A stretch of DNA of 64,000 nt. Source: Octopus sinensis. Taxonomy: Eukaryota. This document shows positions 613 to 54,273 of the stretch, piece by piece; within the stretch, counting starts at the first letter, position 1, and the number at the start of each line of letters is the position of its first letter. The notes beneath the pieces were generated by a model, which saw nothing but the letters and a program-made list of their open reading frames with translations, was not told the DNA's origin and did not search any database. The translations under genes and the position numbers were made by a program. The stretch spans positions 55,056,001 to 55,120,000 of the forward strand of contig NC_043007.1 in assembly GCF_006345805.1 (NCBI RefSeq). The letters are read 5' to 3'.

Positions 613-1385
<773 letters not shown>

Positions 1386-18089: not shown

Positions 18090-18157
18090 CCTTTTCTCTC
18101 TCTCTTTCCTTTTTTGCACTTTCTCTTCGTGTGTAAAACACAATTTTTTATCGGAAC

Positions 18158-29521: not shown

Positions 29522-30651
29522 ATGGCAACACTAGAAGCCATTCTTGCCAATGAATGCAGTGCACCAAATGACCCAACTCCAACAGGTCAGGGGTCACTTC
29601 AACAACAACAAACAACTGACCTAATTCCATTGGAACCAGCACCTGACGACCCAAATCAAGTTTCACTGCTGCTACAGCAACAACAACAACAACAACAACA
29701 TTCTGCTACTGCTACAAGTCAAGTTTCACTGCTGCTACAGCAACAACAACAACAACAACAATACTCTGCTACTGCTACTACAGCCTGAATAGAAAAACCA
29801 CTACTACACCCACATAAAACACCCTGCCATTACTATTCTCAAGGCAGCTGTAGATTTGGCCCCATTCTGGCAAGCCAGAACCCACTATCACAAAAACAAC
29901 AACCTGCTTCTGCCACTACATTGAAACAACAACACTCTGCTACTGCTACTACAGCCAGAATAGAAAAACCACTACTACACCCACATAAAACACCCTGCCG
30001 TTACTATTCTCAAGGCAGCTGTAGATTTGGCCCCAGCGGCACCAACAACAATGGACGCTGTGCTTTTTCCCATCCTACCTTATGTTGTAGACTTGTTAAG
30101 GGCACCTGTCCATATGGTATAACGGGAAAAAACTGCCCTCACCTCCACCCCAAATACAGAGTCCATGGTCCTGATCCCAAATATGGATGCACAAAAGGCA
30201 ATGGATGCACCTTATTCCATCCTAAACTGTGCCAAAATTCTGTGTCACAAAGGATGTGCCTGAACCCAGAATGCAACCACCACCATCTGAAGGGCACAAT
30301 ACGATCACAGAATAAATATAAACAGCAACAGAGGAATCTAAGACAACAACAAGAACAAAATACAACCACGTTTCCCCTCCTACAATCAAACAACGTAGAC
30401 AGAACCATGAAAAAACCATAACACCAAATAACACCAACATGAAATATATATCCTCTGACCAAGTGGCAAACCAAAGAGGTAACTCTTTTTTACTGACTTA
30501 CCTAGAAAATATGAAGGCCGACCTAAGCCAGGAGATCCAACGAGCTATCAGCAACCACCTATGCAAATCACAAGGACCACACACCCATTACCAACAAGAA
30601 AATCATACACACACAGCTCCATACAAGAACTACCCACATTGTTACAACTGA
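29522..30651 (+). pseudogene. CR1 ORF1 with tandem CCCH-type zinc fingers and internal duplications
   Basis: CRYYSQGSCRFG..CAFSHP, CPYG..CPHLHP, CTKGNGCTLFHP, CLNPECNHHH. Confidence 0.7.
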
Positions 30652-30699
30652 ACAACATAAAACATAACTTAGAACAATGCAAACATCAAACTTCCCTTA

Positions 30700-33062
30700 C
30701 CTCGACATTCCTGTTAAATGTACGTGGCATCAACCCAATTATTGCCCCAAAATGGAAGATCCCATATATAGAGAGTTGGCTTGCCGAAACGGCACATTGC
30801 TTCCCTTTCTTTATCCTTACCGAGACTCACCTGAACAACACCCATATGGACGCCGAGGTGAAAATAAAAGATTTCACCATTGTTCGTGCGGATCGCACAG
30901 ACCGAAATAAGGGAGGGACAGCCATCTTTATCCATGACTCCTTTTCACTTGATGCCAAGGACATATTTTCCAATGGCTACTATGAATCGGTATCACTATT
31001 CAGCAAGGCCAAGGACATAATCATTGTTGGTCTTTACAGGCCTCCCCAAGCACCTCAAAAGTGCTTTGAAGAGTGCCTTAGCAAAGTCAAGTCCTTCCTT
31101 CGGAAGTACCACTCCGGAAACATACTAGTGATGGGTGATTTTAACCTCCCTCAAGTGAACTGGCCCACAAATACTCTGAAGTTAGGCAAGTGCTCTACAT
31201 CAGATAGAGCAGCAGCAGAACTGCTCTTTAATCTGATGGATGAATACTTCCTGACTCAGCTAGTGCTCGAACTAACGAGGCAGAATAAAACGATCTTGGA
31301 TCTGGTATTGACCAATCACTCTAGCTTTGTTCACAGTATTTCAGTTGAAAAAACTCTCCTCTCAGACCACGACATGGTACTCTGCAATTTTAATTCACGA
31401 CATATAAAAACCAAACCAGCCAATCCCACTCCATGGCACCCATTTGACAACATAAACTTCTACAAAGCGGACTGGGGAGCAATCAGAAAGGATCTGTCTT
31501 TCATCGACTGGTCTTTTACTCTCAATTCCACCCATATTGAGATCGCATGGCAGCACTTTGAAAACATTGTCACCTATACATGCTCTAAACACGCTCCCAC
31601 GAAATCTACTAACACAAACAGAAACCGGCTCCCTAAAAAGAAAAAAACAGTCACCAGGCGCATCAAAAGACTCAACAAAAAAATCAACCAATTAAAATAT
31701 TCCCACACACAACATCCACATTCAACCACAATGAAAAGGCTAGAGCTGGAAAAACTTCATCTGCAGACCGACATGAAAACCTCCATTGAAAATCAAAGAG
31801 CTGTGGAGGAACAATGGGTAATCAAAAACATCAAACAGAACCCAAAAGTGTTCTATTCTTATGCAAATAAGCATAGAACCACTGTCTCACCCATTGGGCC
31901 ATTGATTGATGATAACGGCATTCCCCAACACGATGCTAAAGAAATGGCAGAAATACTGCAGAAACAATACTGCTCTGTCTTTAGTGTTCCCACTGATATT
32001 GACGTAAGAGAAGCGAACGAAGTTGACTCCCAACATAAAATCTCAGACATAACCTTCACTGCCACTGACACCGTAGCAGCAATAAATGAGGTCAAATACT
32101 ACTCTGCTGTAGGCCCTGATAGATTCCCCGCTAGTCTCCTGAAGGCATGTAGACACCAACTTGCAGTCCCTCTGACCAAGCTCTGGAGAAATTCGTTAGA
32201 CGCAGGTTATATACCGAAACAGTTTCTATCCCAGTCAGTCATCCCGGTTTTCAAACAGGGAAACAGATCCCTCGCAGTCAACTATCGCCCAATCTCACTC
32301 ACCTCCCACATCATTAAAGTGTTTGAAGCGATCAAGGATAGCTGACTTCCTGGAGACCCACAAACTCCTAAATGCAAATCAGCATGGCTTTCGCTGTGGC
32401 AGGGACTGTCTAACACAGCTCTTACACCACATTGAAGATGTACTCAAAGCCTTGGGAACAGGTTCGAACTCTGACGTCATATATCTTGACTTCAGTAAAG
32501 CGTTCGACAGGGTAGACCATAATATCCTACTCTCAAAATTGGCAAATGTTGGAATCCGTGGAAAAGTTCTACACTGGATTAAGTATTTCCTGGCGAATAG
32601 AACACAACATGTTGTAGTTGATGGAGTCCATTCAAGCCCAGCAAAAGTCACCAGCGGTGTTCCCCAGGGAACTGTTTTGGGTTCGCTACTCTTCATAATT
32701 TACGTAAACGACCTTTCCAGTGTCGTACATTACTGCAAAGTGAAAATATTCGCTGATGACACTAAGCTCCAGCAAATCGTCAATGAAGAAGCAGACCGAA
32801 CTCAACTCCAGTCTGATCTATATGCTGTGAGTCAATGGGCAGACAGAAACAAAATGCAACTGAATGAGGGAAAATTTGAGCTGATGCATTTTGGAAGAAA
32901 TTCCTCACTAAAACAACCATACTCTCTTCCTTCAGGGGAACCGCTCACAGCCTCTAACAATATCAAAGACCTGGGTGTAATTGTTGAGGACGATCTCAGT
33001 TGGAGTGCACACATCAACAAGAAGGTCGATATAGCTCGTAGGATGAGTTCCTGGATCTTAAA
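30700..33062 (+). pseudogene. CR1 ORF2 (APE-RT), frameshift near 32330, truncated
   Basis: ORFs 30561-32345 and 32323-33141. Confidence 0.85.
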
Positions 33063-34480
33063 GATGTACAAAGATGCATGTTTTGAATGTGCGTGTGATT
33101 GCACCCGTCTGCGTGTACACACTCATATATACATATATTAATATTTATTTACTTTTTTGAAAGAGTGTATTTTATAAATATGTGTATGGGATGATATGTG
33201 TGAATGTATATATTTATATATATTTTATATATATATATATATTTATGTTTGTATATGTATTTATTTAATCATTTATTGAGAGTCGGATTGAATATATTGG
33301 TGTATATATCGAGTTTTGTACGTATGTATATGTATGTGTGAGTGTGTATATGGTTATGTTTGTGGGTGTGTGTATATATGTGTGTATTTGTGTGTATTGT
33401 GGATTTGGTAAGGGGTTTTTATCTTTATATTTGTATGTATGGATTTCATTTATCATGATTATTTTATTAAGAATTTTTTAGTATTTTAGTCCCCATGCAT
33501 TATAGCTTGGTATGTTGTTCATGGTAGTTTTATATTGGGTATTGTTTTGTAGCCATTTATACATATATTTAGATGTCTAGGAGAGTGTCCGTGAATATGC
33601 ATATTACGTATGTGTATTTTTGTGTGTGAATGTATTATGGGGATTGCTATATAGGTATTATTGTGTATGGTAAAGGGTGTTTTATCATTATATGTATATA
33701 TGGGTTTCATTATCATGATTGGTTTATTAATGATTTTGGAGTAAATTCTGTATATTTACGTTGATTAAATATTATTCCATTCTTTCCATTCATAATTTTA
33801 AAAAAAACGTTCGATCACCACGCGCAAAGAATTGTTTATTTTTCTTTTAAGTGTTTATGTATGTGTGAATGTGTGTGTGTGTGTGATTGTTTGCGTAATT
33901 TATTTATCTGTATGGGTGTGGGTGTGAATATATTGGTGTATATATCGAGTTCTGTATGTATGTATATGTATGTGTGAGCCGGTATATGTATATTGTTTAT
34001 GTCTGTGGGTTGTATGTGTGTGTGAGGGAGTATGAATAAGTAATGTGTTGAAGTATTTGGCTATTTTATTAATTTATTAATTTATCGTTTTTATGTGTAT
34101 GTATAGAGATATATATATTGGTGTGTGAGTTAGTGTATGTATTTAGATATGGTTATATATACTTAGTTATATGTGTATGAGCATGTGTGTATATATAGTT
34201 TATTTTTATTTTGTTTTTGTTTTTGTTTGTTGTTTTGTTTTTTGTTTTTTTTTGTTTTTTGTTTTTTGTTTTTGTTTTTTTTTTGCTTTTTGTTTTTTGT
34301 TTTTTGTACATCTTTAAATATGAGAACTTTAATAATAGGTTTCTTTATATTCAATTGTTTATAGGGTTTATTTTAGATTATATATTGATTATATATAGAT
34401 TATATATATTTATATTTTTCATTGATAATTTTATTATTTTAAACTTATATTTTAATATATTGATATTTTAGATCGAAAAT

Positions 34481-34956: not shown

Positions 34957-36373
34957 CAATTGCGGCCAAAATGTTCAGAACGGCATTGTTTTCGTCAGAA
35001 AAGTAGGTATAAGTTTTTATCAAAAGTTGTTTTATATTCTATAATTTTCACAGACAATAAATACGATATTATTTGTTATTGTCTGAGATTTTGGTGTAAT
35101 TTGAGAGGATAATACAAAAGTTATGGATGATTTAGTGATTTGCTGCAAAACCCATGGCGGCCAAAATGAAAAACTAACAAAATAATAAAAAATTACAGAG
35201 AATACTGGAATTATTTAATATTTAGTGTGAAGCCCTTTAGCTTCAATCACACTTTGACATCTTCGACTGCATGAGGAAATTAAAATTTCAATTTCTTGCT
35301 GGGTGATCTTATTCAAATCTTCCTGAAGGGCATTCCATAATTGCTCGGTTGTTTTAGGATTTCTGGCTTTCGAACGTTCTCCTAGAATATTCCACACATT
35401 TTCAATAGGATTGAAATCTGGGCTTTGAGCAGGCCAATCCATAATAATAACCTTTTCAGCCTTGAGGAAGTTCATGACCACCTTAGCCTTGTGACATGGG
35501 GCATTGTCCTGCATGAATATGGGTGGTCGCTTAGTTGAATTTCTCAGCATAGGCAAGACATGATCTTTTACAAGTTGTTTATAAACTCCTGCATTTACAT
35601 TTCCATGCAATCGCACCAAAAGGCCCACACCATCTCCAGATATCATCCCCCAAACCATGACACTTCCTCCACCGAATTTAACACTAGTCTTAAGGCATTT
35701 AGGCGACAATTTTTCACCTTCTTTTCGACGAACGTACCTTCTCCCATCTGAGCTAAATAACATAAACTTAGATTCATCACTGAAATGCACCGTTTGCCAT
35801 TTTTCTTGAGACCACAACACATGTTTAGTTGCAAAGGTAAGACGACACTTTTTATTCTTGGAGCTGATCAGTGGCTTCACTGCAGGTGCTCTTGCTTGTA
35901 GGTCATGTTCAACTAAACGACGAGACACAGTTTTTCGAGATAAAGTTTTCTTCAGTACAATGCTCATTTTCCGAGAAACAACAGCAGCAGTTTTAAATCT
36001 GTCCTTTTTAACCAACTTTACCATAGCACGATCTTCTCTCTTGGTCGCTTTTCTTGGCCTACCTGTAGACTTTATTGCTTCACACGAACCATAATCATCG
36101 TAGACCTTAAGAATACCGTGAACATCACTTTTTGACTTGTTAACAATCTTTGCAATAAAGCCAATACTTAAATTATCCTTCTTTCGAAGCTTAATAATCT
36201 GCTGATGAATTGGTGACGGAGTAAGTGGCATTATATTAATAAAGTACACTGAAAGCATTCTATAATTAGTAAACGAACCGTCACGTAAACAAATTCAAAA
36301 CATTAGAGTTCGCCGGTTAAATATACTAAAACACGGAGTAATAGCAACCGTTCTGATCATTTTGGCTGCGATG
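34957..36373 (-). mobile_element. Tc1 DD34E transposon
   Basis: TA then CAATTGCGGCCAAAATGTTCAGAACGG; imperfect inverted partner at 36348-36373. Confidence 0.9.
35215..36258 (-). CDS. Intact Tc1 transposase (347 aa from the first ATG)
   Basis: HTH, GRPR hook, FSDESKF, VKFGGGSVMVWG, QDNAPCH, SPDFNPIENVW; 34 residues between D and E. Confidence 0.92.
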   Translation of the reverse strand: MLSVYFINIMPLTPSPIHQQIIKLRKKDNLSIGFIAKIVNKSKSDVHGILKVYDDYGSCEAIKSTGRPRKATKREDRAMVKLVKKDRFKTAAVVSRKMSIVLKKTLSRKTVSRRLVEHDLQARAPAVKPLISSKNKKCRLTFATKHVLWSQEKWQTVHFSDESKFMLFSSDGRRYVRRKEGEKLSPKCLKTSVKFGGGSVMVWGMISGDGVGLLVRLHGNVNAGVYKQLVKDHVLPMLRNSTKRPPIFMQDNAPCHKAKVVMNFLKAEKVIIMDWPAQSPDFNPIENVWNILGERSKARNPKTTEQLWNALQEDLNKITQQEIEILISSCSRRCQSVIEAKGLHTKY

Positions 36374-36690: not shown

Positions 36691-36786
36691 CACACACATG
36701 CACACATACACACGCACACACACACAGGGTATATATATATATTCGATTAATGAGAGGGAGAGATGGAAGATACGAGAATGTTTATT

Positions 36787-36894
36787 GATCACTACAATTG
36801 TTTCGACCAATCTAGCATCGATCCCGCACGGGTGGGATACTGAACAAGTGCTTTAGGAGTATCCGCCGGTGTGGATATGTCTCCTCAGTTGATT
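36787..36894 (-). ncRNA. Hammerhead motif with about 70-nt stem II insert
   Basis: CTGAGGA-GAC...GTC-GAAA; palindrome ACAATTGT; GUA site; stem I ATCA/TGAT with the closing pair mismatched. Confidence 0.55.
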
Positions 36895-37555
36895 AAAAAA
36901 TGTATCTAGTTAAAATAACTTTTGTTACGCTAGTTTTCTTCTCGGTATGCGTATACAAAAGTAACAAATGAAGGGATACAGTTCAGTAATAATTATCAGG
37001 TGCAAAAATAAACAAATACACAATACAACAAAAAAAGTATTAAATATAACCGAGGAATCCCTGTGTATTTTGTGGATCAATGAGAAGATCATTAATAGTA
37101 TTAGTGAAAAACTGTCAAGATGCATACATGTTTATAAATGCACTTCCGCACAATGCAGTAGGAATTAATATGAGTAATCATTAACCAAATTAATAACCGT
37201 AATTTACTTTAAGGTATAGATAAATTAACTGTAACCTCATTCTTATAAACGCAAAGTATCTATTTACTTTGCTGTGTGAGCGTATGTGCGCCAAGCTACG
37301 CGTATGCGTATCCTTTTATCTTCGTGTAAGTTTGTACGAGCGAGTGTACGTGCGTCATATAACCTATACATCCATATCTGTTAACGGTTATATTTAATAC
37401 TTTTTTCGCTGTATTGTGTATTTGTTTCTTTTTGCATTTGATTTTTATTGATCTTCTATTATAATGAAGCTGTATCCATTAATTTGTTGCTTTTGTATAC
37501 ACATAGCGAGAAGAGAACTAGCGAAACAGACATTTTATAACGAGATACATCTTGC

Positions 37556-37663
37556 AATGAACTGAAGAGACACATCTACACAGGCGGATACTCCTAAAGC
37601 AGCTGTTCAGTAACCCACCCATGAGGGATCGATGTTGGATGGGTCGAAGCAGTTGTAGTGATC
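37556..37663 (+). ncRNA. Degenerate paralog of the 36787 hammerhead
   Basis: CTGAAGA-GAC...GTC-GAAG-CAGTTG-TA-GTGATC. Confidence 0.45.
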
Positions 37664-37829
37664 AGTAAATATTCTCGTATCACCCATCTTCCGTCACTCT
37701 CATTAATCAAATACACAACGAACATTGTGAAAGTGAACATACTTTGCCAGTAAGCTACCAGGTGTATACCATACGATTTATAATCTAATATATATATGCA
37801 TAAACATGTATACACACACATGTATGTAT

Positions 37830-38178
<349 letters not shown>

Positions 38179-38259: not shown

Positions 38260-38321
38260 CTTTAATCACGCTTCTTCATATTAATAAAGATCACGACAGA
38301 CAGTCTCTACCGGGGGCAGAT
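38260..38321 (-). CDS. Candidate host gene exon 4 (D-LPPVETVCRDLY-stop plus 3' UTR)
   Basis: Acceptor ttttactgtttctttag, donor GTAAGT; phase matches exon 3. Confidence 0.5.
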
Positions 38322-38365
38322 CTAAAGAAACAGTAAAAGAAATCTTACACGAATGTACATGTATA

Positions 38366-40141
38366 TAGTATCTCTCAGAAGTATGTGCACTCCTAAAAAA
38401 AATTCAGTAAAGTTGCCATTACTCTGATAATATCGAAGAAAATCAAAAGAAATTTATACTGAATAAAATATATTATACATGCAATCATTATACAAGTTTG
38501 GATCACAAAGCAATAAACATTTTCAAAGATATGAACGAAATATTACTTTTCAAACGTTACAAAAATATGTACACCCTAAAAGAAATTTGCTATATTCAGT
38601 ATTTGGTGTGACCACACTTGCTTTCAATGACTGCTTTAAGTCTTCTGGACTAAATTTCCGCATATAACCGTTGAAATCAACCTCCATTCATCCTGAATGA
38701 TGTCTTTCATTGCGGGTTTTTTTCTCCTCAACCTTCCTTTTCAAAACACCCCACAGATGTTCTATCGGGTTTTAATCAGGTGACATGTCAATACCTTTGT
38801 ATCTGATAAAAAAAATCTTAGACGTCATCTTTGAAGTGTGTTCGAACATGGAATGTCTTCCTAGTTCCTTGATGCTTTTCAACATTGTTTTCTGCAATAT
38901 GTTACAATAAAGCCTTGAGTCCTGGCGGCAAGCTGGCAGAAACGTTAGCACACCGGGCGAAATATTTAGCGGTATTTCGTCTGTCTTTACGTTCTGAGTT
39001 CAAATTCCACCGGGGTCGACTTTGCCTTTCATCCTTTCGGGGATAAATTAAGTACCAGTTGCGTACTGGGATACATCTAATCAACTGGCCCCCACCCCCC
39101 AAAATTTCGGGCCTTGTGCCTAGAGTAGAAAAAATGTGAGTTCTCCCACACCAGCCACACTCAAGCATCCCCGATGCATAACACTTCCGCTGTGTTTCAC
39201 GGTATGTACGGTACATTTCTTGCTATTATCTTCGCTTGGTCGTCGCCATACTCGTTTAATACCATCTGACCTAAGCGAGTTGATTTTAGTCTCGACAGAA
39301 AAAAGAATTTTATTCCAAAACTCCTTCCATTCACTCACATAGGTTTCGGCAGAAGAAAGACGACTTGATTTATGCCTGGTAGTGAGGAGAGGCTTCCTAC
39401 GGGGAATGCGTCCATGAAGACCACACTGGTTCAAACTTCGATGAACTGTTTGGGCGGATACACTCTTTTCACTAACAGAAGATACTTCTTGGGCCAAAGA
39501 TGAAGCGGTACGACGCCTGTCGTCCATCACGCAACGTTGGATGTGACGAATATCAAGCGCAGTTAAAACAGAAGGACGACCTGGACGATGTTTATTGCAT
39601 AGCCGTCCAGTAGCTTTGTACTTCTAAATTATTTTAGCAACAGTGTTTACGTTAATATGTATTCGTTTGCTAATATACTTGTATCCTAAACCACTCTTGT
39701 GCAAATTAAAAATAATTTTCTTCAAATCTTCAGACAATTCTTTTCCTTTTGGTGCCATTTTAATCACAATGAAGATTTTCACCACGGTACACAAATCAGA
39801 ATTCTTGCAGATACAATAACAATGACCGGTGCAATATTCCAGGAGAAATAATTTATTAGAATTGAAATTATCAGCAATATCTGAATTAGAAAAAAACGTG
39901 GATAAAATATTGAATATAGCAATTTCCTTTAGGGTGTACATACTTTTGTAACGTTTGAAAATTAATACTTCGTTCATATCTTTGAAAGCGTTTATTGTTT
40001 TATGTTTCAAATTTGTGTAATGTTTGCATGTATAATATATTTTATTCAGTATAAATTTCGTTTGATTTCCTTCGATATTATCAGAGGAATGGCACTTTTA
40101 CTGAAAATTTTAAGGGGTACACATACTTCTGAGAGACACTG
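38366..40141 (-). mobile_element. Tc1 with long IR/DR-type TIRs (~233 bp), degenerate
   Basis: 38366-38598 is the reverse complement of 39910-40141; TA flanks; MAPKGKELSEDLKKII and RRKPLLTTRHK...VKHSGSVM. Confidence 0.9.
38924..39133 (+). mobile_element. tRNA-derived SINE nested in the Tc1
   Basis: Same family as 3400-3650. Confidence 0.85.
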
Positions 40142-40356
40142 TATAATGCATACACACATGCATACATACAAACATGCATACATACATACATATATACACA
40201 TATATATATAAATATATATATACATATATATATGCATATATGGGTACAGGACGTCACCAACTGTAAACAACATGAAGTACGAAAACAAGCGAGTTAAATA
40301 CGCAAACAGCGAGAGTAAAAATGGAAAACAGGACAGGTAACAGGGAACGACCTTTC

Positions 40357-40440
40357 TTTTCGACATATGTTTCGAAGTCTGCAAAATCCCTAATTCCAAA
40401 TGAATAAGGAGTCCATTATGCAGCTTTCTCTTCAGGAAAA
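40357..40440 (-). ncRNA. Hammerhead with canonical core, long stem II
   Basis: TTTTC-CTGAAGA-GAAAGCTGCA...TGCAGACTTC-GAAA-CATATG-TC-GAAAA. Confidence 0.8.
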
Positions 40441-40521
40441 TTCAGGAACTGTTTACTCTTATCACGGAACGTGGAAAAATGATTTGATATCCTTGTGGCT
40501 AATTTAGAGGAGGTTGCGCTA

Positions 40522-41218
40522 AAATAGCACAGATATTAGCAGCCTTCATACCAGCATTGGCGTTAGTAATAGTAATAAGGATAAGAGCATTGGCCTGGTC
40601 ATTAACGGAGGGGGTCTCAACAATAATAGTAGCAGCGGTTTCAACAACAGTAGTTTTACGGACAATAACCATCACAGCATTCCCAGAAACAGGGAATGTG
40701 CAGTTGATATTGCCTTAAATAGTAATGAAAATAGGTTGAATAGTATAGAATACAGCAGTAATTTTTACAACAATCATAGAAATAAGAACGCTGTATTAGT
40801 ATCGGAAACTAATCCCAATAGATTAAGGTTCTTATCAAATAACTCCAAAATTAGAAACACCACTTACCAGTGCAAAATTTCTGCTGGATCCGATGTCTAC
40901 CTCTATATTGGCGCAACCTCCTCTAAATTAGCCACAAGGATATCAAATCATTTTTCCACGTTTCGTGATAAGAGTAAACAGCATGCCACGGGGCTAAGCA
41001 AATTAGCCTGGCGTTTGAAGAACGCAAATTCAACTTTTAAGCTATGGTCAATATTATCGGTGTTCTTACCGTTTGATAAGGCAAGAAAAATCTGTGCCCT
41101 CTGTAATTCCGAATTCTTTCATATTCTGTTTGCCCGAGGCCAACTAATAAACTCGATTGTCGAGAGATCTTTCAGATGCCTACACTGGAAAAAGCATACC
41201 TTTCACTCATACCAATGA
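40522..41218 (+). CDS. PLE N/S-rich linker plus GIY-YIG endonuclease (open frame, 5'-truncated)
   Basis: TYQCKI..YLYIGAT..L.TRISNH..F..ATGLSKLAW.LK..WSI..C.LC. Confidence 0.8.
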
Positions 41219-41774
41219 AGTCTAATATAGATAACCCCTGGATTTCCTACAAAATTAAAATGTGATATCTCATCCCTTTAGTTTATAAGACTTTCTCATA
41301 ATTGCTAAGAACTACTACCAATTCCAGCTGTAACCTTGTCTCTTGTCATTACTATTGTGGCCTCCATCTGCCCTCTCCCTCTTAAGTTGACACATTCGAA
41401 CACACAGACACAGTCTTTTCACCTCCTGACCGTTAATTCTTTCTCTCTGCCTTCCACACACACATTCACGCATTCACAGACACACACATTAAGGCAATTT
41501 TTTACACTCATACATACGAGCACTCATTCATAAAATAAATCAAATATAAACACCAGTCATACAGAATACATTCCCTCACATTAATTTTCCTTTACCTTCC
41601 TTCTCCAACCTTGATTGAACCCTTGAACTATTTTAACTGACATTTTCTCCTACTTTCAACCAATCTGGCGTCACCCCCTATAAATAGACATTATTTATCA
41701 TTATCTCTATGGGCTCCTCGTGAGCAGTCATCGAAAAACTTGTTGTGCATTTTGTTGGATAATTAAGTTCCTGG

Positions 41775-41860
41775 ATTTTCCCGAAGAGAAAGCTGCATAA
41801 TGGACTCCTTATTCATTCGGAATTAGGGATTTTGCAGACTTCGAAACATATGTCGAAAAT
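41775..41860 (+). ncRNA. Hammerhead, U4C variant, long stem II
   Basis: ATTTTC-CCGAAGA...GAAA-CATATG-TC-GAAAAT. Confidence 0.75.
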
Positions 41861-42372
41861 AAAATAAAGGAATTTTGTTAAATCTTCGTTCAGCTCCATT
41901 CTTTCCTATACTTAATATATTAAATTAAACTTCAAATTTCCGCACTAAGGCACGGAGTTTATGCCCTATGGTCGTAACTTCAACCGTGCTTTTTCTGTTG
42001 TGAGTTTGCTACCCAGGTATCGGTTATCTTTCGAATTATCCGTAATAAGATAATTCATTTGTCTACTTAAATAATTATATATATATATAAGTGTGTGTAT
42101 GTATACACACATATAGATATATATGTGAGTGTTTGTATATATGTTTCTCTGTAATCATGTAGCGAGTCACAGGAATTTGGCAATTTATAATTTTGAGACG
42201 TCAGTCCATAAAGATGACTTAACTATGGATGTTGGACACAATATCCTTCATGATATACATCAATACACACATGTGTATATATGCATGTATATATATAATT
42301 TCTAAAGAGATAAGTTAAAGGATCATTATAACCATAATCATATAGTAAAGGGCTGTGCCTATTGAAACCTAC

Positions 42373-42420
42373 CCTGTTCAGGTCTGTCTACATCCATTAC
42401 TGAGCAGGAGCGAACTGTAG
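42373..42420 (-). CDS. Candidate host gene exon 3, 48-nt microexon (A-TVRSCSVMDVDRPEQ)
   Basis: Acceptor aatatatttgcag, donor GTAGGT; phase 1-1; open. Confidence 0.55.
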
Positions 42421-42515
42421 CTGCAAATATATTTCAAAATGTTAAATTACACGAATTTGTGTGTGCCCGCGTGTGACAGGGGGAGAGAGAAAGAAAGAGA
42501 GAGAGATAGAAGGAA

Positions 42516-42583
<68 letters not shown>

Positions 42584-42832
42584 CCAAGGAGCATACGTGT
42601 ATACATATTTGTCTGTGTTGTGTTGTGTGTGGGTTCACTTACGCGGTTTGGATTTCTCAGTGACATATAGCTACATCATAATCACCTAGAATAATTGGAG
42701 AAAGAATAGAACATACCACCAGGTCATACGTGTTTACAATTGAAGCATACCTTTATTGATGTATGTATGTTATAGAAGATTAAAAGATAAGGGAACAAGT
42801 CTACATTAGAAATGACGTTTATTATTCCTCAC

Positions 42833-42880
42833 CGTCAAGAAGGATGAGGTCAGGAATTGGCGATTTCTTGGGAGAAGTAT
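42833..42880 (-). CDS. Candidate host gene exon 2, 48-nt microexon (D-TSPKKSPIPDLILLD)
   Basis: Acceptor ttatttctgtcttcttttcgattccag, donor GTGAGG; phase 1-1; open. Confidence 0.6.
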
Positions 42881-43016
42881 CTGGAATCGAAAAGAAGACA
42901 GAAATAACATCAATCCTTCGTCTACGCATGCATACTTATATACTTGTATATATTCATTCATACATACACACACACACACACACACAAACTTTTATTCATA
43001 CATGCATTCATACATA

Positions 43017-43170
43017 CTAGCTGGACCGGTGAAAAATTCCCGGAAAATATAGGAAAAACGTAAATTGTGTAAATTGTGTGCTGGTGCCATGAGAAATGTT
43101 TCTATATTGCGACAGTTACAGAATATAGAAAGAAGTGTAAAACCGGTAAATTTAATGAAAAATATCTCGG
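43017..43170 (-). mobile_element. Possible Helitron 3' end
   Basis: Minus strand CCGG-GAATTTTTCA-CCGG then TCCAGCTAG. Confidence 0.4.
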
Positions 43171-44589
43171 TTACGCAAACGTAACTGGACTTGTAAACCT
43201 AGTGCTTATTCTATCAGTCTCTTCTACCGAACAGCTAAGTCCCTTCTGCTGAACGCAAACACACCACCATCGGTTGTCAAGCAATGGTGGTGGGGGGACA
43301 AACAAACACAAACACACACGGCCACGAATGATCTGTCCTGGTTTTTCCTGTTTGTCTTTCTGTCCGTATGTTTTTATCATCGTCCGTTACGTTCATATTC
43401 CGTTTTTTAAAAAAATCTATATATACATATAGCGGTGTACGTAAACCTTTGCTCACTTTGTAAGTAAGTATGTATCTAAATTCTGTACGACTTTTTTCTC
43501 CTTATTTTAGTCACCTTTATACTTTCTCCTTTCTTTCCTCCTTTCTTTTTCTTGCTTCTCTTCTCTCACATTTCTTGGCATTCTCTTTCTTTAATCTCTC
43601 TGCTTTCCTTCGTTATCTCCCTTGCACCTTTCCCTCTGTCCTTTCATCTCTCCCTCCCCCCTCGCTTTCTTTATTTCCTTCCCTAATTCTTCAATTCCTC
43701 TGCCCCCTACCTCTCTCTGTTCCTTCCACGTGACCGGTGGTCGGCCAAGCATGATCTTTCCTTCTCTGTCTGACCGCCACCCGTACAACACTTTATTTTC
43801 CTGTCTCCTGACTTTTATCTATATTTGTGCCTCAAGGCTTTCACTCCACACACCAGCTCAATTTAACTTGTTCTTATTAGTCGAAAGACACATGTTGCTA
43901 TTCTCTTGTTTGCATTTGTAATCGTGTAACGTTTTCTCCGTTTTCTCGTTTTCTTTTTTGTCTGTGTTGTCGTACTCCTTCGCTTGCTTTCTTCCAAAAC
44001 TTTAATGCCCTTAGCTTAGATTTTGTGGGGCCTACCAATTTTGAACAGTTTCAAGTGCAACAAGCCGAAATTGTAATGATAATTGGAAGCTTAACTGATG
44101 AAATGAGGGCCACGAATGATCAAGTCCTGGTGATTCCTGTCTGTCTTTGTATCGTCTATCTGTCCGTATGATTTTAATGTCGTCTGTTACGTTCTTATTC
44201 CGTGTTTTGGATTTATATATATATATATATATATATATGACGGGCTTCTGTCAGTTTCTGTCTTCCAAATTCACTCTTGAGGTTTGGTTGGCTTGAAGCT
44301 ATAGTAGAAGACACTCTTTAAAGTATGAAGTTGAATTGCGTGTAGCCACATGCTGGCAACTTTTCTCTCCCACCCATTTTTTAGGGGGTATTGTCCATTT
44401 TTCTGGGCTCTTTTCACAGCTATACCCCGTTCGAAATTTGCATTGTTTGTAGTTTGTAGAGAAAACGTTAAAAGTGCCTGAAAAAAAACATGGTCTTTCC
44501 CGCCAACTAAAAGACATGAAAAGCTATGAAAGAAGGCGAATAAGTACCTGGGGTGGCGGCAAAGAAGAACGAACTAAAGGTCGATCGTT

Positions 44590-47500
44590 CTAGAACTCCC
44601 AGAATGAAAACGTTAACACCTGAAAGAAGGGAGCACACATGTCTTGTACACCTTTATCATTGTCTTTCTGCATATGTCTCGCCGACTCCAGAGGCGCTTT
44701 TCTAGCCTTCCGAAAGCAACACTTGCTTTCCTAATTCTATATGGAATTTCATCATCCTAATTGCTATATGTATTAATAGTGCTTCCCAGGTAGACAAACT
44801 GATCAACTACATCAAATCGTTTACCATACACATAAGATATTTGGTACACTATTCTGCTTACCAGTTTTCTTGAGATTGACTGTCAATCCTAAGGCAGTGC
44901 AAGCATCAGGGAATGCATTCAAAATGTGTTGCATATCAATCTCTGTGTGTGCTACTAGCTCACAATCATCTGCATACAAAAGGTCTCTTATGATAGAGGT
45001 AAATACCTTTGTTTTTGCAGCAAAGCGCCTGATATTAAATATGCTACCAGAGGGTCGATAATGGATGTAAACACCGTATCTGCAGTTTCTGAATACAATA
45101 CAGAACACCATCGCAAAATATATGGCAAATAGGGTCGGTGCCAGAATATCTCCCTGTTTCACCCCATTTTGTATTGAAATGGTCTCCGACATTTTCCCTC
45201 TAACATTCACCCTACTCTTCATGTCTTCATGAAAAGACCTAACCAAAGCAAGGAACTTTTCAGGACACCCAAGTTTCTGGAGGACTTTCCACAATGCTTT
45301 TCTATTGACGGTATCAAAGGCTTTTGTCAGATCGACAAAAACCTGATACAAATCCAGACCCTGTTCCACACACTTCTCCTGAAGCTGTCTAGCTGAAAAG
45401 ATCATATCAGCAGTGCCATGTCCCACACGAAAGCCAGATTGACTTTCTGGAAAAACACAATCTGCAACGTATTTCAGCAGACGATCTAGAAGTACCCTGC
45501 ATAAAACCTTTCCTACGACAGACAGCAATGATACTCCCCTGTAATTACCACAATCATTCCTGTTGCCCTTTCCCTTGTACAAGACCACCATTACTGTATC
45601 TCTCCAGTCCTCAGGTACAGATTCACTAGTCCATATCTTACCAAACAAAGAGTGAAGTTTCTGCAGAAGTTTCTCACCACCATGCTGTAACAACTCCGCA
45701 TGTATGCCATCCATACCCGGAGACTTCCCATTATTCAACCTTGAGACAGCTATTGCAATTTCTTCCAACTTTGGTGGTTCCGCGAGTGCTGCCTTCACAG
45801 GTAATCCAGGGATGAGATTGAGAACATCTTTACTAACTAAAGTTCATCAAAGTGTTCTTGCCACCTTCGCAGAATTCCTTGTAAATCACGAAGTTCTTTA
45901 ACATCCCTGCTTTGAAGTGGTGTCATCAGGGAAGACGTCGGTCCATAAATTTCTCGCAAGAGACCATATTGGAATCTGATGCCGCCTGTATCTCATCAGC
46001 CTTCTTTCTCCACCACGTATCCCTCATCTGAGAGAGCCTTTACCTCACACGTGATTTTACGTCCTTGAGTTCCCTATGCAACACTCCCCTTTCCTGTGGC
46101 TTTGCTGATAAATAGCGTAACAAAGTACGTCTTTTATAAGCTAAAAAACATTTATATGTTCATCATTTTCTTTAAACCAATGTTGGTGCTTTCTTTGTAC
46201 CAATCCCAGAACTTTCTTGCCTATATCATAAACTGACTTTTTAAGGGTCGGCCAATCCTCCCCAATATCTGCAGCATTCATTTCCTCTCATAAAGTTCTC
46301 TTAACACTATTACACCTAAACGATCAACATTCAGTCCCTTAGGCAGGGTAATCCCTGCAGCTCGGATTTTATGTTTTGTGACTAATTTCACTTTTGCACG
46401 TACTAGGTGGTGTCAGTCCAACACTCAGCTCCACGAAGAACACGAACACACTGCACATCCTGTCTGTCACGCACCATAACAAGGATGTAATTCAGAATAT
46501 ACCATTCTTTAGATGCAGGGTGCATCCATGTAGTCTTAAACTTATTCTTTTGTTGAAACATGGTATTGGTAACACACAGACGCAGCTCTTCACACATCTG
46601 CAGCAAAAGCATACCATTACTATTACACTTCCCCACCCCATGCTTTCCAATTACAGTCCATGTGTTAAAATCCCTACCCACTCTAGCATTAAAGTCACCC
46701 AGTAGAATGACTTTGCCCGAGGGATATTTCTTATAATGCCCTTCAAAGCATGGTAGAAAGAATTTTTTTCGTCATCGTCATAGCACATAGTTGGAGCATA
46801 CACAATCACCAAGGTCACATAATTTCCTTTAACCAAAGGAATTCTCATGGACATAAGACGCTCGTTAATTCCGACTGGGAATTCTTCCAACTTGTCCACA
46901 AGAGTAGTCTTAACAGCAAATGCCACTCCAGCTTCTCCTTTGAACCCTTCATTCCTCCCTTTCCAAAAGAATGTATATCTTCCACAAGATTCTGTAAGAT
47001 GACCATCTCCAGGTAATCTCGTCTCAGATAAAGCAACGATGTCAAGATTATAGCGTTGGAGCTCCTTCGCAACAAACGCAGTCCTTCTTTCTTTGGTTCT
47101 ATCACAGTAGCGTGATGACGGCCGGGTTCACACTGTGATGCTCTGGAGCCCCTGCCGGGCCAGACTCTTTCAACTGATGTGGTTCCAGAGTCCTTACTGT
47201 CATTTATTTTTATACTGTTTTAGTACATCATTGATGTTTTGTTTTTTAAGGCAACAGCCAGCCATTCAGTTGAGACACAGCGCCATCAACAATCATAAAT
47301 TAGTTAATCAATTTAATCAATCAATCAATGTTGTTATCGTGCAATGCCTGTGCAAGATTTTTTTTAAAGTGAGGAAAGGCTGTGCACTGAGTCAATTCCA
47401 CTCACTAAGCAACAGCAGCCATAATCCGAAAGGAAGAACAAGTCAACAACATCGATAACCACTGAGCCGCAGGTTTTATGTCGGAGTTATCCCAGTTACC

Positions 47501-47800
47501 TGAGTTACCTTCTCCTAGAAGGATACCCTAACAAAGGCTAGGAGTCCTTCACTCCCAATGGTTTAATCGCGCAATCGGGTATTCAGTCCGATTATTTCTA
47601 TGATACAGCCTTAAGACATTTATTGGATGGCCGCTGACTCTCAAGAGTTCCTCCGCTCTTTGACGGGTTTTATTTTTCATCCCGCAGGGTGTCCAATAAA
47701 CACCCTCCTCACCAAGCAAGCTTGGTGGGGTTGCCGGTTTAGTCGCCGACGACCCGAGCATGCAACAGGTTGTATTGAGTTACATGTTACCAGTAGCACT
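44590..47800 (-). mobile_element. RTE-clade LINE, degenerate, with 5' leader
   Basis: APE pieces 46403-47105; RT 44821-45798 (GNYRGVSLL, QSGFR, FVDLTKAFD, QGDILAP, YADD); RKASVAFGRL at about 44720. Confidence 0.9.
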
Positions 47801-48162
47801 CAAAAGTGACCTGACATACGACATACATACATACATACATACATACATACATACATACATACATACATACATACATACATACATACATACATACATACAT
47901 AAACTTATGGAGGCGAAGGTGCCGATCATTTGTTGGACCATCATTTTATCTAAATAGTATAAATGAGTATTGGGTGATTTGCTGGTGATTTTTGCTTCTA
48001 CGTCTTCTTTGTCTCGCTAAAACAGTTTGGGCGTATACATGCTTATTGTACCATAAAGTATCTAACTCCAACTCCATTATTTAACAAATACACGTTTACA
48101 TTCACCCCCACCCCCTACACGCACAGATATTTAGACGCTTTTATGTTTGTGTGCGAACACAA

Positions 48163-48214
<52 letters not shown>

Positions 48215-48222
48215 AGAGAGAG

Positions 48223-48292
<70 letters not shown>

Positions 48293-48353
48293 AAGTTATC
48301 TAAATTGTTAATACATTTCAGAAATATTACTAACGGCATTCATCAAAACTCAC

Positions 48354-48468
48354 CCATGTCCTCTGGCGTGACTGTCGATGACGAATCTGCTACCGTTGAA
48401 CTAAGTTCTACGGCATCTATAGAAGTGTCATCATCAAATGTTTTCGGGCGGCAAATACACGGATTCAT
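48354..48468 (-). CDS. Candidate host gene first coding exon (MNPCICRPKTFDDDTSIDAVELSSTVADSSSTVTPEDM)
   Basis: Unique, relatively GC-rich island; ATG with an in-frame TAA 6 nt upstream; donor G/GTGAGT, phase 1. Confidence 0.5.
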
Positions 48469-49257
48469 ACGTTATAGAATTCTTTGGATCCTTGCGCCAA
48501 ACTGGGCGGGGAAACCTGAACAGTCGATACGTTCGGACATTTAGGAAAAAATTAGATAAAACCAAAGATTAGTAAATATGTTAACGCAAACAATGTATTT
48601 AATAACAAATTACAAGAAGTTACCTTCTAAACAGTAGCAAATATCGCAAGTGAATAGTTTCACAAGCTGGTAGCATAAATTTCAATTTGCAATTATAACA
48701 TCATAATTTTATGAAACAGTCTCGGTTAACGTTTTAACTTTAAATATCGTTTTATCATCTGCCTAACAAAGTGCACTTGTAATAGCCAAAATCACATGTA
48801 ATAGTCAAAATGGCATTTTGTAGTTTTATTTTTGTATTATTTTTTCTCTACATCCATAATTCCTCTCTTCTCCCGAGATAAGCACAAAACACAAAGCTTG
48901 ACAGATGCACAATGTAAGAGAGCACCTCTGATGCAAGCCTGACGAAATGCCACTCTAATCTCTATAGCCACAAATATTTCGTACCTTTTCACACGGAACT
49001 TTTGTGTATATTGATGTTAAAAGAGAATTGATAATACATATATAAATACATAATACATACATACACAGATTCTCACACAACACACACACAAGTATATACA
49101 TATGTTTGCATGTGTGTATATGCATGTATGTATAGCTTATATTGTTATATAAGTTATATTGTTATATAATTATATGTATAATATATAATATATAATATAT
49201 ATACATATATACATATATGTATACACACACACACATATATATATATATACATATATG

Positions 49258-49366
<109 letters not shown>

Positions 49367-51803: not shown

Positions 51804-52210
51804 CTATCCATATGATATATTTATATTTGACATTTTAAATTTGGTTGCGTGTCTACATAAGTTCATTAGCTCACTTCTTTGATTCAAAGAATTATTGTCT
51901 TTGAATAAAATGTACATTTTTTCTAATAGGCAAAGCTTGCATTTAAAATTATTTCTATGTGCTCCATGCCTGTATGGTGCCGCTCTGTCCAGAATGCTCC
52001 ATGTCACGTTGAAAGGTGGGGTTTCCTTTTCTTTTAGTTCCCAGACATATTTTGCTAGGCTGGTCCTCTTCCTATTCTCTGGGTATTTAAATGAATTTTT
52101 ATGTGAATAAAATCGTGTTTTAAATGAATTTTCTGAAGCCCCTGTGTATGTCTTGTATTCCGATGAGCCTTCTACTTGCACATTGGCTCTATAAACTACT
52201 CTATATGATA
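51804..52210 (-). mobile_element. PLE GIY-YIG endonuclease fragment, open frame
   Basis: VVYRANV..TYTGASENSFKTRFYSH..TSLAKYVWELK..WSIL..CKLCLLEK..LNQRSEL..CRH. Confidence 0.9.
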
Positions 52211-52248
52211 TATATATGATAATAATAGTAATAATAATAATAATAATA

Positions 52249-52291
<43 letters not shown>

Positions 52292-52315
52292 TTAATAATA
52301 ATAATAATAATAATA

Positions 52316-54273
52316 CTCTGCGAAACTTTTTGTCTGTAAGTATGAGATCATGGAGAACCACACTAACTTTGAACAGTGACAATGAATCTCTAAATGCTGG
52401 TGATGTAAAAATTTCATGTGGCATTTTCCAGGGTGACTCTCTATCACCACTCCTCTTTTGTTTAGCCTCTCAAAATTGCTCAATGACGCGCAGTACGGAT
52501 ATAAAATGTTTGATAACAATACAAATCATCTCATTTACATGGATGATTTAAAGCTCTTTGCAAAAAATGACCAACAACTCAAGGGCTTACTAGCGATTGC
52601 TAAACAATTCAGTGATGACATCAGAATGCAATTTGGCCTCGATAAATGTGCAAAAGCTACCTTTATCAAAGGAAAAATGACAGAAACATCTAACGTTAAC
52701 CTTGACCAGCAGAATGTCATAAAAGAATTAGACCCAGCGGAGAGCTACAAGTACCTAGGGATAATTGAAGGGGACGGTATAAGGCATTCAGTGATGAAGG
52801 AAAGGATCAGGAGAGAATGTTATCGCAGAGTAAGAGCAATACTCAAGACAGAGCTGAATGCGAGAAACAGGATCGAAGCGATCAATGCTTTAGCCATACC
52901 AATCGTAACTTACAGTTTCAATATCGTTAACTAGTCAATTACTGAAATATGTAATCTTGACAGAAAAATACGAAAACTGTCGACAATGCATAGAATGCAC
53001 CACCCTAAGGCAGATACAGAACGACTTTATCTGCCAAGAAAAGAGGGAGGCCGTGGACTTTTACAAATGGCAATAACGATGAAGATTGCTACAATTGGCC
53101 TAGACACCTACCTGAAAAACTCTGAGGACTGGATGTTAAAACTTGTCTCAAAACATGAAAACAAGAAAGCATCATACTCAGTAACAAAACAGGCAAAGGA
53201 ATATCTGAGTGAATTCCGAATACAACAAATTTCGGAATTAGACATACAAGAAACAAGCACAGAAAAAGCTAAAACCCGTGCTAAAACTGGGCCTTAGATA
53301 TTTTGAATGATAAATGGCAAGAAAAACCTCTCTATGGCAAATACCCAAAGAGAGCGAATAATGCAGATGTTGACAAAGCCCTGACCCATCAATGGCTAAT
53401 GGCCTCTGGCTTAAAATCTGAAACAGAAGGGTTTATCATAGCAGCTCAAGATCAATGCCTACCAACAAAAAACTACCAGGCCAACATATTAAAGAACGGC
53501 ATTAGCCCAACATGTCGTGTATGTCAACAACAAATTGAAACCATTGATCATGTTGTTTCCAAGTGCAGTCTTCTAGCGCCTACAGAGTATATCTACAGGC
53601 ATGATAGAGCTGCACAGTATATTCACTGGGTAATCTGCAAAAACCTGGATTTGCCCCATGAAAAAAAAGACTGGTGGAAACACAAACCACCTCCATTGCT
53701 TGAAAATGAATACATCTCACTCCTCTGGAACTTCACCATTCAAACTGACAGAAAGATAGATGCAACTAGGCCAGACATCATATTGAAAGACTTCAGACAA
53801 AGAACATGCCTCCTTATTGATATGACTGTCCCAATCGATATAAACGTATCTGTCAAGACCTACCAAAAACTGAGCAAATATAAAGATCTTGAAATAGAAA
53901 TCAGCAAAATGTGGAACCTGAAGACTAAAACAATACCTGTTGTCATAGGTGCCCTGGGAATGATAGCAAAAGGGGCTGATTGTTACCTAACTCAGATACC
54001 AGGAAACCCCAAAATGGCAGAAATTCAAAAGATAGTGCTCATGGGAACTGCTCATATCCTACGCAAAATACTTTCTATGTAATCTCATGGTTTAAAACAA
54101 ACATAATTTGCGTTTTGTTTTTTAGACATTCACTAGTACAACCCCCCCAAACCCCCCAAATATATGGCACACTAGGAATAACAACAACATGAACTTCCAA
54201 CCTATTGTCTCCTGAGGTCTCTGGGTGAGACTTGGAGCCAACTTGTACAAATATAAAGCAAAAGTCAAACATA

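What the first reader, a model, noticed from the sequence alone, without database searches (positions are those of the whole stretch)
38260..48468. Hidden microexon gene encoding an 83-aa acidic protein
Seen: four unique-sequence islands on the minus strand have consensus donors, and exons 2-4 also have consensus acceptors. They splice phase 1-1-1 into MNPCICRPKTFDDDTSIDAVELSSTVADSSSTVTPEDMDTSPKKSPIPDLILLDATVRSCSVMDVDRPEQDLPPVETVCRDLY. Both internal exons are exactly 48 nt. The stop lies about 21 nt before a further donor, which would escape the 50-nt NMD rule. Inference: a real small, probably disordered protein with SP phosphosites, perhaps lineage-restricted. The N-terminus could be longer if an internal acceptor at about 48421 is used.
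Basis: partly seen in the sequence, partly recalled or inferred. Interest (0 to 1): 0.72.

Follow-up and report, generated by a model that had tools for sequence, protein, structure and literature searches.

The report
Octopus orphan gene, already catalogued
The four small exons are real sequence features and splice into an 83-residue acidic protein, but the same model is already listed as an uncharacterised predicted protein of Octopus bimaculoides, has no other relatives or known domain, and has no evidence here that it is made.

Summary
Four minus-strand exons (48468-48354, 42880-42833, 42420-42373, 38321-38260) have the stated donors, acceptors, lengths and phases. They splice to exactly the quoted 83 aa.

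The exon chain alone is not beyond chance. Hundreds of comparable chains exist in this repeat-rich region, and 5 of 40 shuffles also give one.

The decisive evidence is one database hit: UniRef A0A0L8ICI9, an 'Uncharacterized protein' of Octopus bimaculoides. It is also 83 aa, with the same start and end, and 79/83 residues are identical. All four differences are conservative and lie in exon 1. So the window carries the ortholog of an already catalogued gene model, in another Octopus species.

No other relative was found among 1.84 billion representative proteins. There is no Pfam or PDB match. The AlphaFold2 model has pLDDT 50, and the calculated pI is 4.05.

Transcription and translation could not be tested. 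The very strong donor 21 nt after the stop suggests at least one further exon, which I did not find.

Best reading: an Octopus-restricted small gene encoding a disordered acidic protein (confidence about 0.5). Rivals are a non-coding or leader transcript, a prediction artefact, or a fragment of a larger gene. Interest is low.

The parts
48354..48468 (-). Exon 1, coding part (115 nt). ATG at 48468-48466, encodes residues 1-38 plus the first base of codon 39. Donor GTGAGT at 48353-48348.
   Evidence: donor 9.3 bits. All four differences from the O. bimaculoides protein lie here.
48469..48517 (-). Possible 5' leader of exon 1. In-frame TAA at 48474-48472, CCCCGCCC (GC-box-like) at 48511-48504, and an acceptor-like CTGTTCAG ending at 48516 (5.9 bits). 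The true 5' end is unknown.
   Evidence: This is inference only.
42881..48353 (-). Intron 1 (5,473 nt). It holds a same-strand LINE remnant (endonuclease-like ORF 46678-47064, reverse transcriptase ORF 44821-45798) and microsatellites (AGAG-type at 48163-48289, ACAT at 47821-47901).
   Evidence: (RVT_1, E=1.4e-29).
42833..42880 (-). Exon 2 (48 nt, phase 1-1), residues 39-54 (D)TSPKKSPIPDLILLD.
   Evidence: acceptor 8.8, donor 10.4 bits. Identical at protein level in O. bimaculoides.
42421..42832 (-). Intron 2 (412 nt), containing a (GA)48 microsatellite at 42483-42578.
42373..42420 (-). Exon 3 (48 nt, phase 1-1), residues 55-70 (A)TVRSCSVMDVDRPEQ.
   Evidence: acceptor only 1.2 bits, donor 8.4 bits. 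Identical at protein level in O. bimaculoides.
38322..42372 (-). Intron 3 (4,051 nt). It holds Tc1/mariner transposase fragments (39120-40010, minus strand) and a GIY-YIG-like ORF (40736-41218, plus strand).
38260..38321 (-). Exon 4 (62 nt), residues 71-83 (D)LPPVETVCRDLY. Stop TAA at 38283-38281. An ATTAAA hexamer at 38266-38261 is followed by a consensus donor AAG|GTAAGT (38259-38254). All three frames carry stops, so as delimited it cannot be an internal coding exon.
   Evidence: (donor 11.8 bits).

Best explanation
This locus is the ortholog, in another Octopus species, of the Octopus bimaculoides gene model for uncharacterised protein A0A0L8ICI9. It is an Octopus-restricted gene on the minus strand with four small single-copy exons, probably followed by at least one more non-coding exon. 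The exons are separated by introns full of transposon remnants.

The conserved 83-codon reading frame encodes a 9.1-kDa, aspartate-, serine-, threonine- and proline-rich acidic protein without a stable fold.

The most likely mode of action (inferred, not shown) is that of a disordered carrier of short linear motifs. It has a cluster of proline-directed phosphorylation sites (TSPKKSP). These are followed by two hydrophobic-acidic motifs (DLILLD and VMDVD) in the invariant C-terminal half, which would bind a partner protein in a phosphorylation-dependent way. It is not an enzyme or a structural domain.

Shown: the exon anatomy, the orthologous annotated protein, the absence of other relatives or domains, and the low-confidence structure prediction. 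Inferred: transcription, translation and the motif-based function.
For: - The spliced product is 83 aa, and its only database relative is UniRef100_A0A0L8ICI9. That protein is also 83 aa, with E=3e-43, 95% identity and 100% coverage, and the same first and last residue.
- The three codons split by introns (D39, A55, D71) are the same in both species, so the exon boundaries are shared.
- All 4 substitutions (A19S, V26A, A27T, D37E) are conservative single-base changes in exon 1. The 45 residues from exons 2-4 are invariant. The chance that all 4 fall in the first 38 of 83 positions is about 0.04 (my arithmetic).
- The reading frame is open over 83 codons, while the other two frames of the spliced sequence carry 8 and 9 stops in 90 codons.
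- The donors are strong (8.4-11.8 bits; 41 sites of >=8.3 bits on the 64-kb minus strand).
- The exons are single-copy and richer in G+C (0.46) than the introns (0.36-0.41).
- pI is 4.05, with 17 acidic against 7 basic residues.
- AlphaFold2 mean pLDDT is 50. There is no Pfam or PDB match.
- No Rfam family or tRNA lies in the introns, so nothing points to a small-RNA host gene.
Against: - No transcript, junction-read, ribosome-profiling or peptide evidence could be reached.
- I could not read how the O. bimaculoides model was made.
- The window's species is unknown. I therefore cannot tell whether 95% identity exceeds neutral expectation. [quoted passage not shown]
- The exact protein is not in the 15-billion-sequence collection, and no assembled transcript product matched it.
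- The start codon context is weak, and the acceptor of exon 3 scores only 1.2 bits.
- The strong donor after the stop shows the transcript model is incomplete.
- Splice-compatible chains of this quality arise by chance in this region.
- The motif readings are regular-expression matches recalled from general knowledge and were not tested.
Confidence: 0.5

Rival explanations
1. The transcript is real, but the 83-codon frame is not its function. The four small exons would be part of a long non-coding RNA. Alternatively they are the multi-exon 5' leader of a longer mRNA, with the frame acting as an upstream ORF and the main coding exons lying further downstream, possibly outside the window.
For: - Exon 4 has stops in all three frames and ends in a near-perfect donor AAG|GTAAGT. 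This is one of 4 sites of >=11.8 bits in the window and lies 21 nt after the stop, so the RNA very probably continues.
- The start context is poor.
- The exons are tiny and the introns are large and full of transposons.
- There is no domain and no relative outside Octopus.
- Given the exon boundaries, keeping the frame open needs only about a 2/3 x 1/3 coincidence of phases for exons 2 and 3.
Against: - The frame, its length and its termini are the same in a second species, and the only changes are conservative replacements.
- No further exon, and no coding exon other than transposon remnants, was found in the rest of the window.
- No snoRNA or miRNA lies in the introns.
Confidence: 0.25
2. 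It is a prediction artefact. No such mRNA exists, and both the first reader and the 2015 annotation pipeline picked the same chance chain of splice-like sites in orthologous, slowly diverging DNA.
For: - Comparable chains are common. There are 451 in the real region, and 5 of 40 shuffles give at least one.
- The acceptor of exon 3 is weak (1.2 bits).
- No transcript-derived protein from public read assemblies matches.
- The model seems absent from other annotated proteomes in the databases searched.
Against: - Four substitutions in 38 codons of exon 1 show the two species are not near-identical. Yet there is no indel, stop or boundary change in 249 nt spread over 10 kb, and no replacement in exons 2-4.
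- Four of the 41 strongest minus-strand donors flank exactly these single-copy islands.
- The strong donor right after the stop is unlikely by chance, at about 0.001-0.012.
Confidence: 0.15
3. It is a fragment of a larger protein-coding gene. Exons 2 and 3, and a 63-nt version of exon 1 entered through the acceptor at 48417, would be symmetric phase 1-1 cassette exons of a long disordered region. Exon 4 would be an alternative stop-carrying exon.
For: - The lengths 63, 48 and 48 nt are all multiples of three in phase 1-1.
- Exon 4 looks like an internal exon.
- Early octopus gene models are often fragmentary (general knowledge).
Against: - The internal acceptor is weak (3.9 bits).
- No other protein in the databases shares any part of the sequence.
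- No convincing further coding exon on the minus strand was found in the window.
Confidence: 0.1

Closest known systems
UniProt/UniRef A0A0L8ICI9_OCTBM, 'Uncharacterized protein', Octopus bimaculoides (predicted, 83 aa)
   Same: Same length, same initiator Met and same C-terminal Tyr. 79/83 residues are identical, the intron-split codons are the same, and residues 39-83 are identical.
   Different: Four conservative replacements in exon 1 (A19S, V26A, A27T, D37E), so it comes from a different species. Its DNA, exon coordinates and supporting evidence could not be retrieved.
Taxonomically restricted small-ORF genes (microproteins under 100 aa) of animals
   Same: It is under 100 aa, has no homologs outside a narrow lineage, has no domain, is predicted disordered, and is multi-exonic with tiny exons.
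   Different: Membership of the class of proven microproteins needs evidence of translation, and there is none here.
Micro-exon genes (MEGs) of schistosomes
   Same: The internal exons are short, symmetric and multiples of three (48 and 48 nt, phase 1-1).
   Different: There are only two such exons, and they are longer than the 6-36 nt typical of MEGs. 46% of the coding sequence lies in a conventional first exon. There is no N-terminal signal peptide (MNPCICRPKTFDDD is polar). The phylum is unrelated. It is not a member of this family.
Small-RNA host genes and other spliced lncRNAs with short exons
   Same: Short exons, long repeat-filled introns, and a stop followed by another donor.
   Different: No snoRNA, miRNA or other Rfam family lies in the introns. 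The reading frame is preserved in a second species.

Membership tests
Ortholog group of O. bimaculoides A0A0L8ICI9 | Full-length significant sequence similarity | tested here: met
   E=3.4e-43, 95% identity, 100% coverage. E=1.1e-43 in the exhaustive search.
Ortholog group of O. bimaculoides A0A0L8ICI9 | Same length, termini and intron-split codons | tested here: met
   83 aa against 83 aa with no gaps. D39, A55 and D71 are identical.
Ortholog group of O. bimaculoides A0A0L8ICI9 | Conserved genomic position and exon coordinates (synteny) | not testable with these tools
   No gene with this product is on record, so no DNA was retrieved. Metagenome scans found nothing.
Translated microprotein / small-ORF-encoded peptide | ORF under 100 codons on a spliced transcript | tested here: inconclusive
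   The ORF is 83 codons. Splicing is inferred only from site quality and the orthologous model.
Translated microprotein / small-ORF-encoded peptide | Direct evidence of translation (Ribo-seq or peptides) | not testable with these tools
   No such data were reachable. The accession appears in no searchable paper.
Taxonomically restricted (orphan) gene | No detectable homolog outside the lineage | tested here: met
   There is one hit only, from Octopus, among 1.84 billion representatives. No Pfam family reaches its cut-off and there is no PDB match. Caveat: how well these libraries cover other cephalopod proteomes is unknown.
Schistosome-type micro-exon gene (MEG) | Most of the coding sequence built from many symmetric exons of about 6-36 nt | tested here: not met
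   There are two internal exons of 48 nt, and exon 1 carries 115 of 249 coding nt.
Schistosome-type micro-exon gene (MEG) | N-terminal signal peptide (secreted product) | tested here: not met
   The N-terminus MNPCICRPKTFDDDTS has no hydrophobic core (by inspection). No signal-peptide predictor was available.
snoRNA/miRNA host gene | A small RNA gene inside an intron | tested here: not met
   No Rfam hit reaches its gathering score in the whole window. Sub-threshold hits all sit on microsatellites.
Short linear motifs (clathrin box L-phi-x-phi-[DE]; SUMO-interaction-type hydrophobic-acidic core; CDK site [ST]Px[KR]) | Pattern match in a disordered, conserved segment | tested here: inconclusive
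   LILLD (50-54), VMDVD (62-66) and SPKK (41-44) fit the patterns and lie in the invariant part. The patterns are recalled from general knowledge and have low specificity.

The most novel reading that the evidence does not exclude
A genuinely translated, Octopus-specific (possibly de novo) 9-kDa acidic microprotein. Its invariant C-terminal half (TSPKKSP-IPDLILLD...VMDVD) would be a phosphorylation-gated docking module for a conserved cellular machine such as SUMO or clathrin. This would be a lineage-restricted regulator in a clade known for gene novelty.
Probability: 0.35. Interest if true: 0.35.

Novelty: already known. Interest (0 to 1): 0.18.

Why it matters
It matters little by itself. 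The gene model has been public since the O. bimaculoides genome annotation, and nothing here shows a function.

This window adds a second species' copy. That copy shows that the frame, its length, its termini and the exon boundaries are kept, and that the C-terminal 45 residues are invariant while the N-terminal part changes. This makes the model a slightly better candidate for a real octopus-restricted microprotein.

It also gives two junction-spanning tryptic peptides to look for. On method, it shows that the first-stage reader recovered an annotated multi-exon model from raw sequence in a transposon-rich genome.

Tried and rejected
- Family searches: Pfam gave only DUF1179 at E=0.12, below its cut-off. 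PDB sequences gave nothing. The exhaustive 1.84-billion-protein search gave only the O. bimaculoides protein.
With the full 83-aa protein, the scan of metagenome contigs gave 360 pattern matches, none confirmed. A 25-nt exon-3 pattern gave none.
- Species identification through transposon ORFs: the 779-aa LINE ORF has best hits of only 55% identity and none carries an octopus name. The Tc1 transposase has unnamed hits at 81% (ENA ERZ21867824) and at 94% over 59% of its length (Logan SRR9969997). That run accession appears in no searchable paper. The species remains unidentified.
- How the O. bimaculoides model was built: the 2015 genome paper is not held, and the accession is in no paper.
- Small-RNA host gene idea: no Rfam family or tRNA in the window. 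Rejected.
- Micro-exon-gene (MEG) label: rejected on exon size, exon number and the lack of a signal peptide.
- Further exons: I listed every acceptor/donor-bounded open segment outside the recognised transposons on both strands. Only transposon remnants and low-complexity frames turned up. No acceptor of >=6 bits lies within 2 kb downstream of exon 4.
- Duplication of exons 2 and 3: about 42% identity by eye, which is not meaningful.
- A resemblance of IPDLILLDA...PEQD to APC13 came to mind. Pfam gave no Apc13 match, so I dropped it.
- My splice-site matrices are rough and written from general knowledge of metazoan consensus. They are not trained on octopus, so the bit scores are only relative.
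Full report
**1. What is in the sequence**

The window is animal DNA, poor in G+C (0.29-0.42 over most of its length). It is crowded with LINE and Tc1/mariner remnants and long microsatellites.

- Exon 1 is 48468-48354 (115 nt), with the ATG at 48468, an in-frame TAA two codons upstream, and donor TGG|GTGAGT.
- Exon 2 is 42880-42833 (48 nt), bounded by TTCCAG| and |GTGAGG.
- Exon 3 is 42420-42373 (48 nt), bounded by TTGCAG| and |GTAGGT.
- Exon 4 is 38321-38260 (62 nt), bounded by CTTTAG| and AAG|GTAAGT, with the stop TAA at 38283-38281, 21 nt before the exon end.

The phases are 1-1-1 and the spliced product is exactly the quoted 83 residues. The other two frames of the spliced sequence carry 8 and 9 stops. 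The exons are single-copy in the window and have G+C 0.46, against 0.36-0.41 in the introns.

**2. Is the pattern beyond chance?**

I scored splice sites with a rough metazoan matrix written from general knowledge, so the scores are only relative.
- The donors are strong (9.3, 10.4, 8.4 and 11.8 bits). Only 41 sites of >=8.3 bits exist on the 64-kb minus strand.
- The acceptors are uneven (8.8, 1.2 and 6.3 bits).

I then enumerated four-exon chains from ATG to stop of >=80 codons, with thresholds set at the weakest sites the model uses.
- The real 10.7-kb region gives 451 chains.
- 5 of 40 dinucleotide shuffles give at least one.
- The whole minus strand gives 8,216 (a looser version is).

So the chain by itself proves nothing, because this kind of pattern can be found by searching.

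One local feature is unlikely by chance. The donor after the stop is one of only four sites of >=11.8 bits on both strands, so the chance of such a site within 25 nt is about 0.001. Exon 4 therefore looks like an internal exon, and the transcript probably has at least one more exon. I found none: no acceptor of >=6 bits lies within 2 kb downstream. An ATTAAA hexamer at 38266-38261 offers an alternative 3' end.

**3. The decisive evidence**

A search of 5.8 billion clustered proteins returned one hit, UniRef100_A0A0L8ICI9, 'Uncharacterized protein' of Octopus bimaculoides. It is 83 aa, with E=3.4e-43, 95% identity and 100% coverage. An exhaustive HMMER pass over 1.84 billion representatives returned the same single protein.

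The alignment has no gaps. The start, the end and the three intron-split codons are the same. The four differences (A19S, V26A, A27T, D37E) are conservative single-base replacements, all in exon 1. Residues 39-83, encoded by exons 2-4, are invariant.

So the window holds the ortholog of an already catalogued gene model in a different, related Octopus species. The exact window protein is not in the collection.

If exon 1's replacements are taken as a floor for neutral divergence (about 0.045 per non-synonymous site), then about 4-5 replacements would be expected in exons 2-4. None is seen, which gives P about 0.01-0.04. This is my arithmetic on small numbers. It is modest evidence that the C-terminal half is constrained.

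**4. What could not be shown**

I could not retrieve O. bimaculoides DNA or any other octopus DNA. Therefore dN/dS and the exon-versus-intron comparison are missing.

I could not identify the window's species. The transposon ORFs gave only unnamed or distant hits. If it is O. sinensis or O. vulgaris, the split from O. bimaculoides is about 34 My (PMC10700109), and the conservation would be clearly non-neutral. A closer species would weaken that argument.

I could not read how the 2015 model was derived. From memory, that annotation combined transcript evidence, homology and ab initio prediction. A four-exon, 83-aa model without homologs is more likely to rest on transcripts, but this is not verified.

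No transcript-derived protein from public read assemblies matched.

**5. The protein**

It is 9.1 kDa with pI 4.05. It has 13 Asp, 10 Ser, 9 Pro and 8 Thr, with 17 acidic against 7 basic residues.

There is no Pfam family above its cut-off (DUF1179 at E=0.12 only) and no PDB relative. AlphaFold2 on the two-sequence alignment gives mean pLDDT 50 and pTM 0.26, with no confident element. This fits disorder, although a two-row alignment is a weak basis.

Pattern-level features, recalled from general knowledge and not tested:
- Proline-directed sites at T34-P, S41-P-K-K (a full CDK-type consensus) and S45-P.
- Several acidophilic S/T-x-x-D/E sites.
- In the invariant half, LILLD (fits the clathrin-box pattern and a SUMO-interaction-type hydrophobic core with acidic flanks) and VMDVD.

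My committed guess is a disordered motif carrier whose partner binding is gated by phosphorylation. That is inference only.

**6. Rivals**

- (a) A real transcript whose frame is incidental, either an lncRNA or a multi-exon leader with an upstream ORF. The strong donor after the stop, the poor start context (C at -3, A at +4) and the tiny exons favour this. The preserved frame and the conservative changes speak against it. No intronic snoRNA, miRNA or tRNA was found, so the host-gene variant has no support.
The chance statistics allow it. However, the absence of any indel, stop or boundary change over four exons spread across 10 kb in a species that differs at 4 of 38 exon-1 codons argues against it.
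- (c) A fragment of a larger gene. The symmetric 63/48/48-nt exons would fit, but the internal acceptor is weak (3.9 bits). Nothing else in the databases shares the sequence, and no further coding exon was found.

**7. Comparison with known kinds**

It is a member, by sequence, of the A0A0L8ICI9 ortholog group. It resembles taxonomically restricted small-ORF genes. It is not a schistosome-type micro-exon gene: it has two 48-nt internal exons, a conventional first exon carrying 46% of the coding sequence, and no signal peptide.

**8. Verdict**

The gene model is already known, and its function and even its translation are unknown. Interest is low.

Noticed in passing
window 35215-36258 (-): An apparently intact Tc1/mariner transposase ORF of 347 aa (HTH_Tnp_Tc3_2 + DDE_3). 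Its closest database proteins are unnamed: 81% identity on a 344-kb ENA contig (ERZ21867824), and 94% over 59% of the length in Logan run SRR9969997. Truncated copies of the same kind lie in intron 3 (39120-40010, minus strand).
   Followed up: partly
window 54584-58180 (+): A LINE with an ORF1 (342 aa) and an open 779-aa reverse-transcriptase ORF. The best relatives among 5.8 billion proteins are only 55% identical and none carries a cephalopod name, so this family seems poorly represented in public protein sets.
   Followed up: partly
window 15971-21582 (+): A near full-length LINE (430-aa ORF1, 495-aa endonuclease ORF, 682-aa RT ORF). It stands out by G+C of 0.48-0.52 against 0.30-0.38 around it. 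A second LINE lies at 29921-33141 (+), with a Cys/His-rich ORF1.
   Followed up: no
window 676-864 (+), 40736-41218 (+), 51804-52424 (-): Three diverged copies (27-39% identity) of an ORF family with a weak GIY-YIG match and a shared W-S-I-L...P...C-x-L-C...E...I-x-F motif. This is probably the nuclease module of a repeated mobile element.
   Followed up: partly
window 36761-37689: A roughly 930-bp palindrome with arms of about 300 nt that are 83-89% complementary and lie about 330 nt apart. It sits about 570 bp downstream of exon 4, between it and the Tc1 element. It may be a foldback-type element or an inverted duplication.
   Followed up: partly
window 37820-38177, 42483-42578, 48163-48289, 49163-49362: Long microsatellites hug the exons: (TATC)62 and (ATGT)n starting about 80 nt after exon 4, (GA)48 inside intron 2, an AGAG-type tract about 65 nt after the exon-1 donor, and (TA)100 upstream of exon 1. 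They give all the sub-threshold 'miRNA' matches in Rfam (mir-297, mir-466 and others).
   Followed up: yes
window 1-64000: No Rfam family reaches its gathering score and there is no tRNA gene anywhere in the 64 kb. Apart from the 83-aa model, every sizeable ORF is a transposon remnant or a microsatellite frame.
   Followed up: yes
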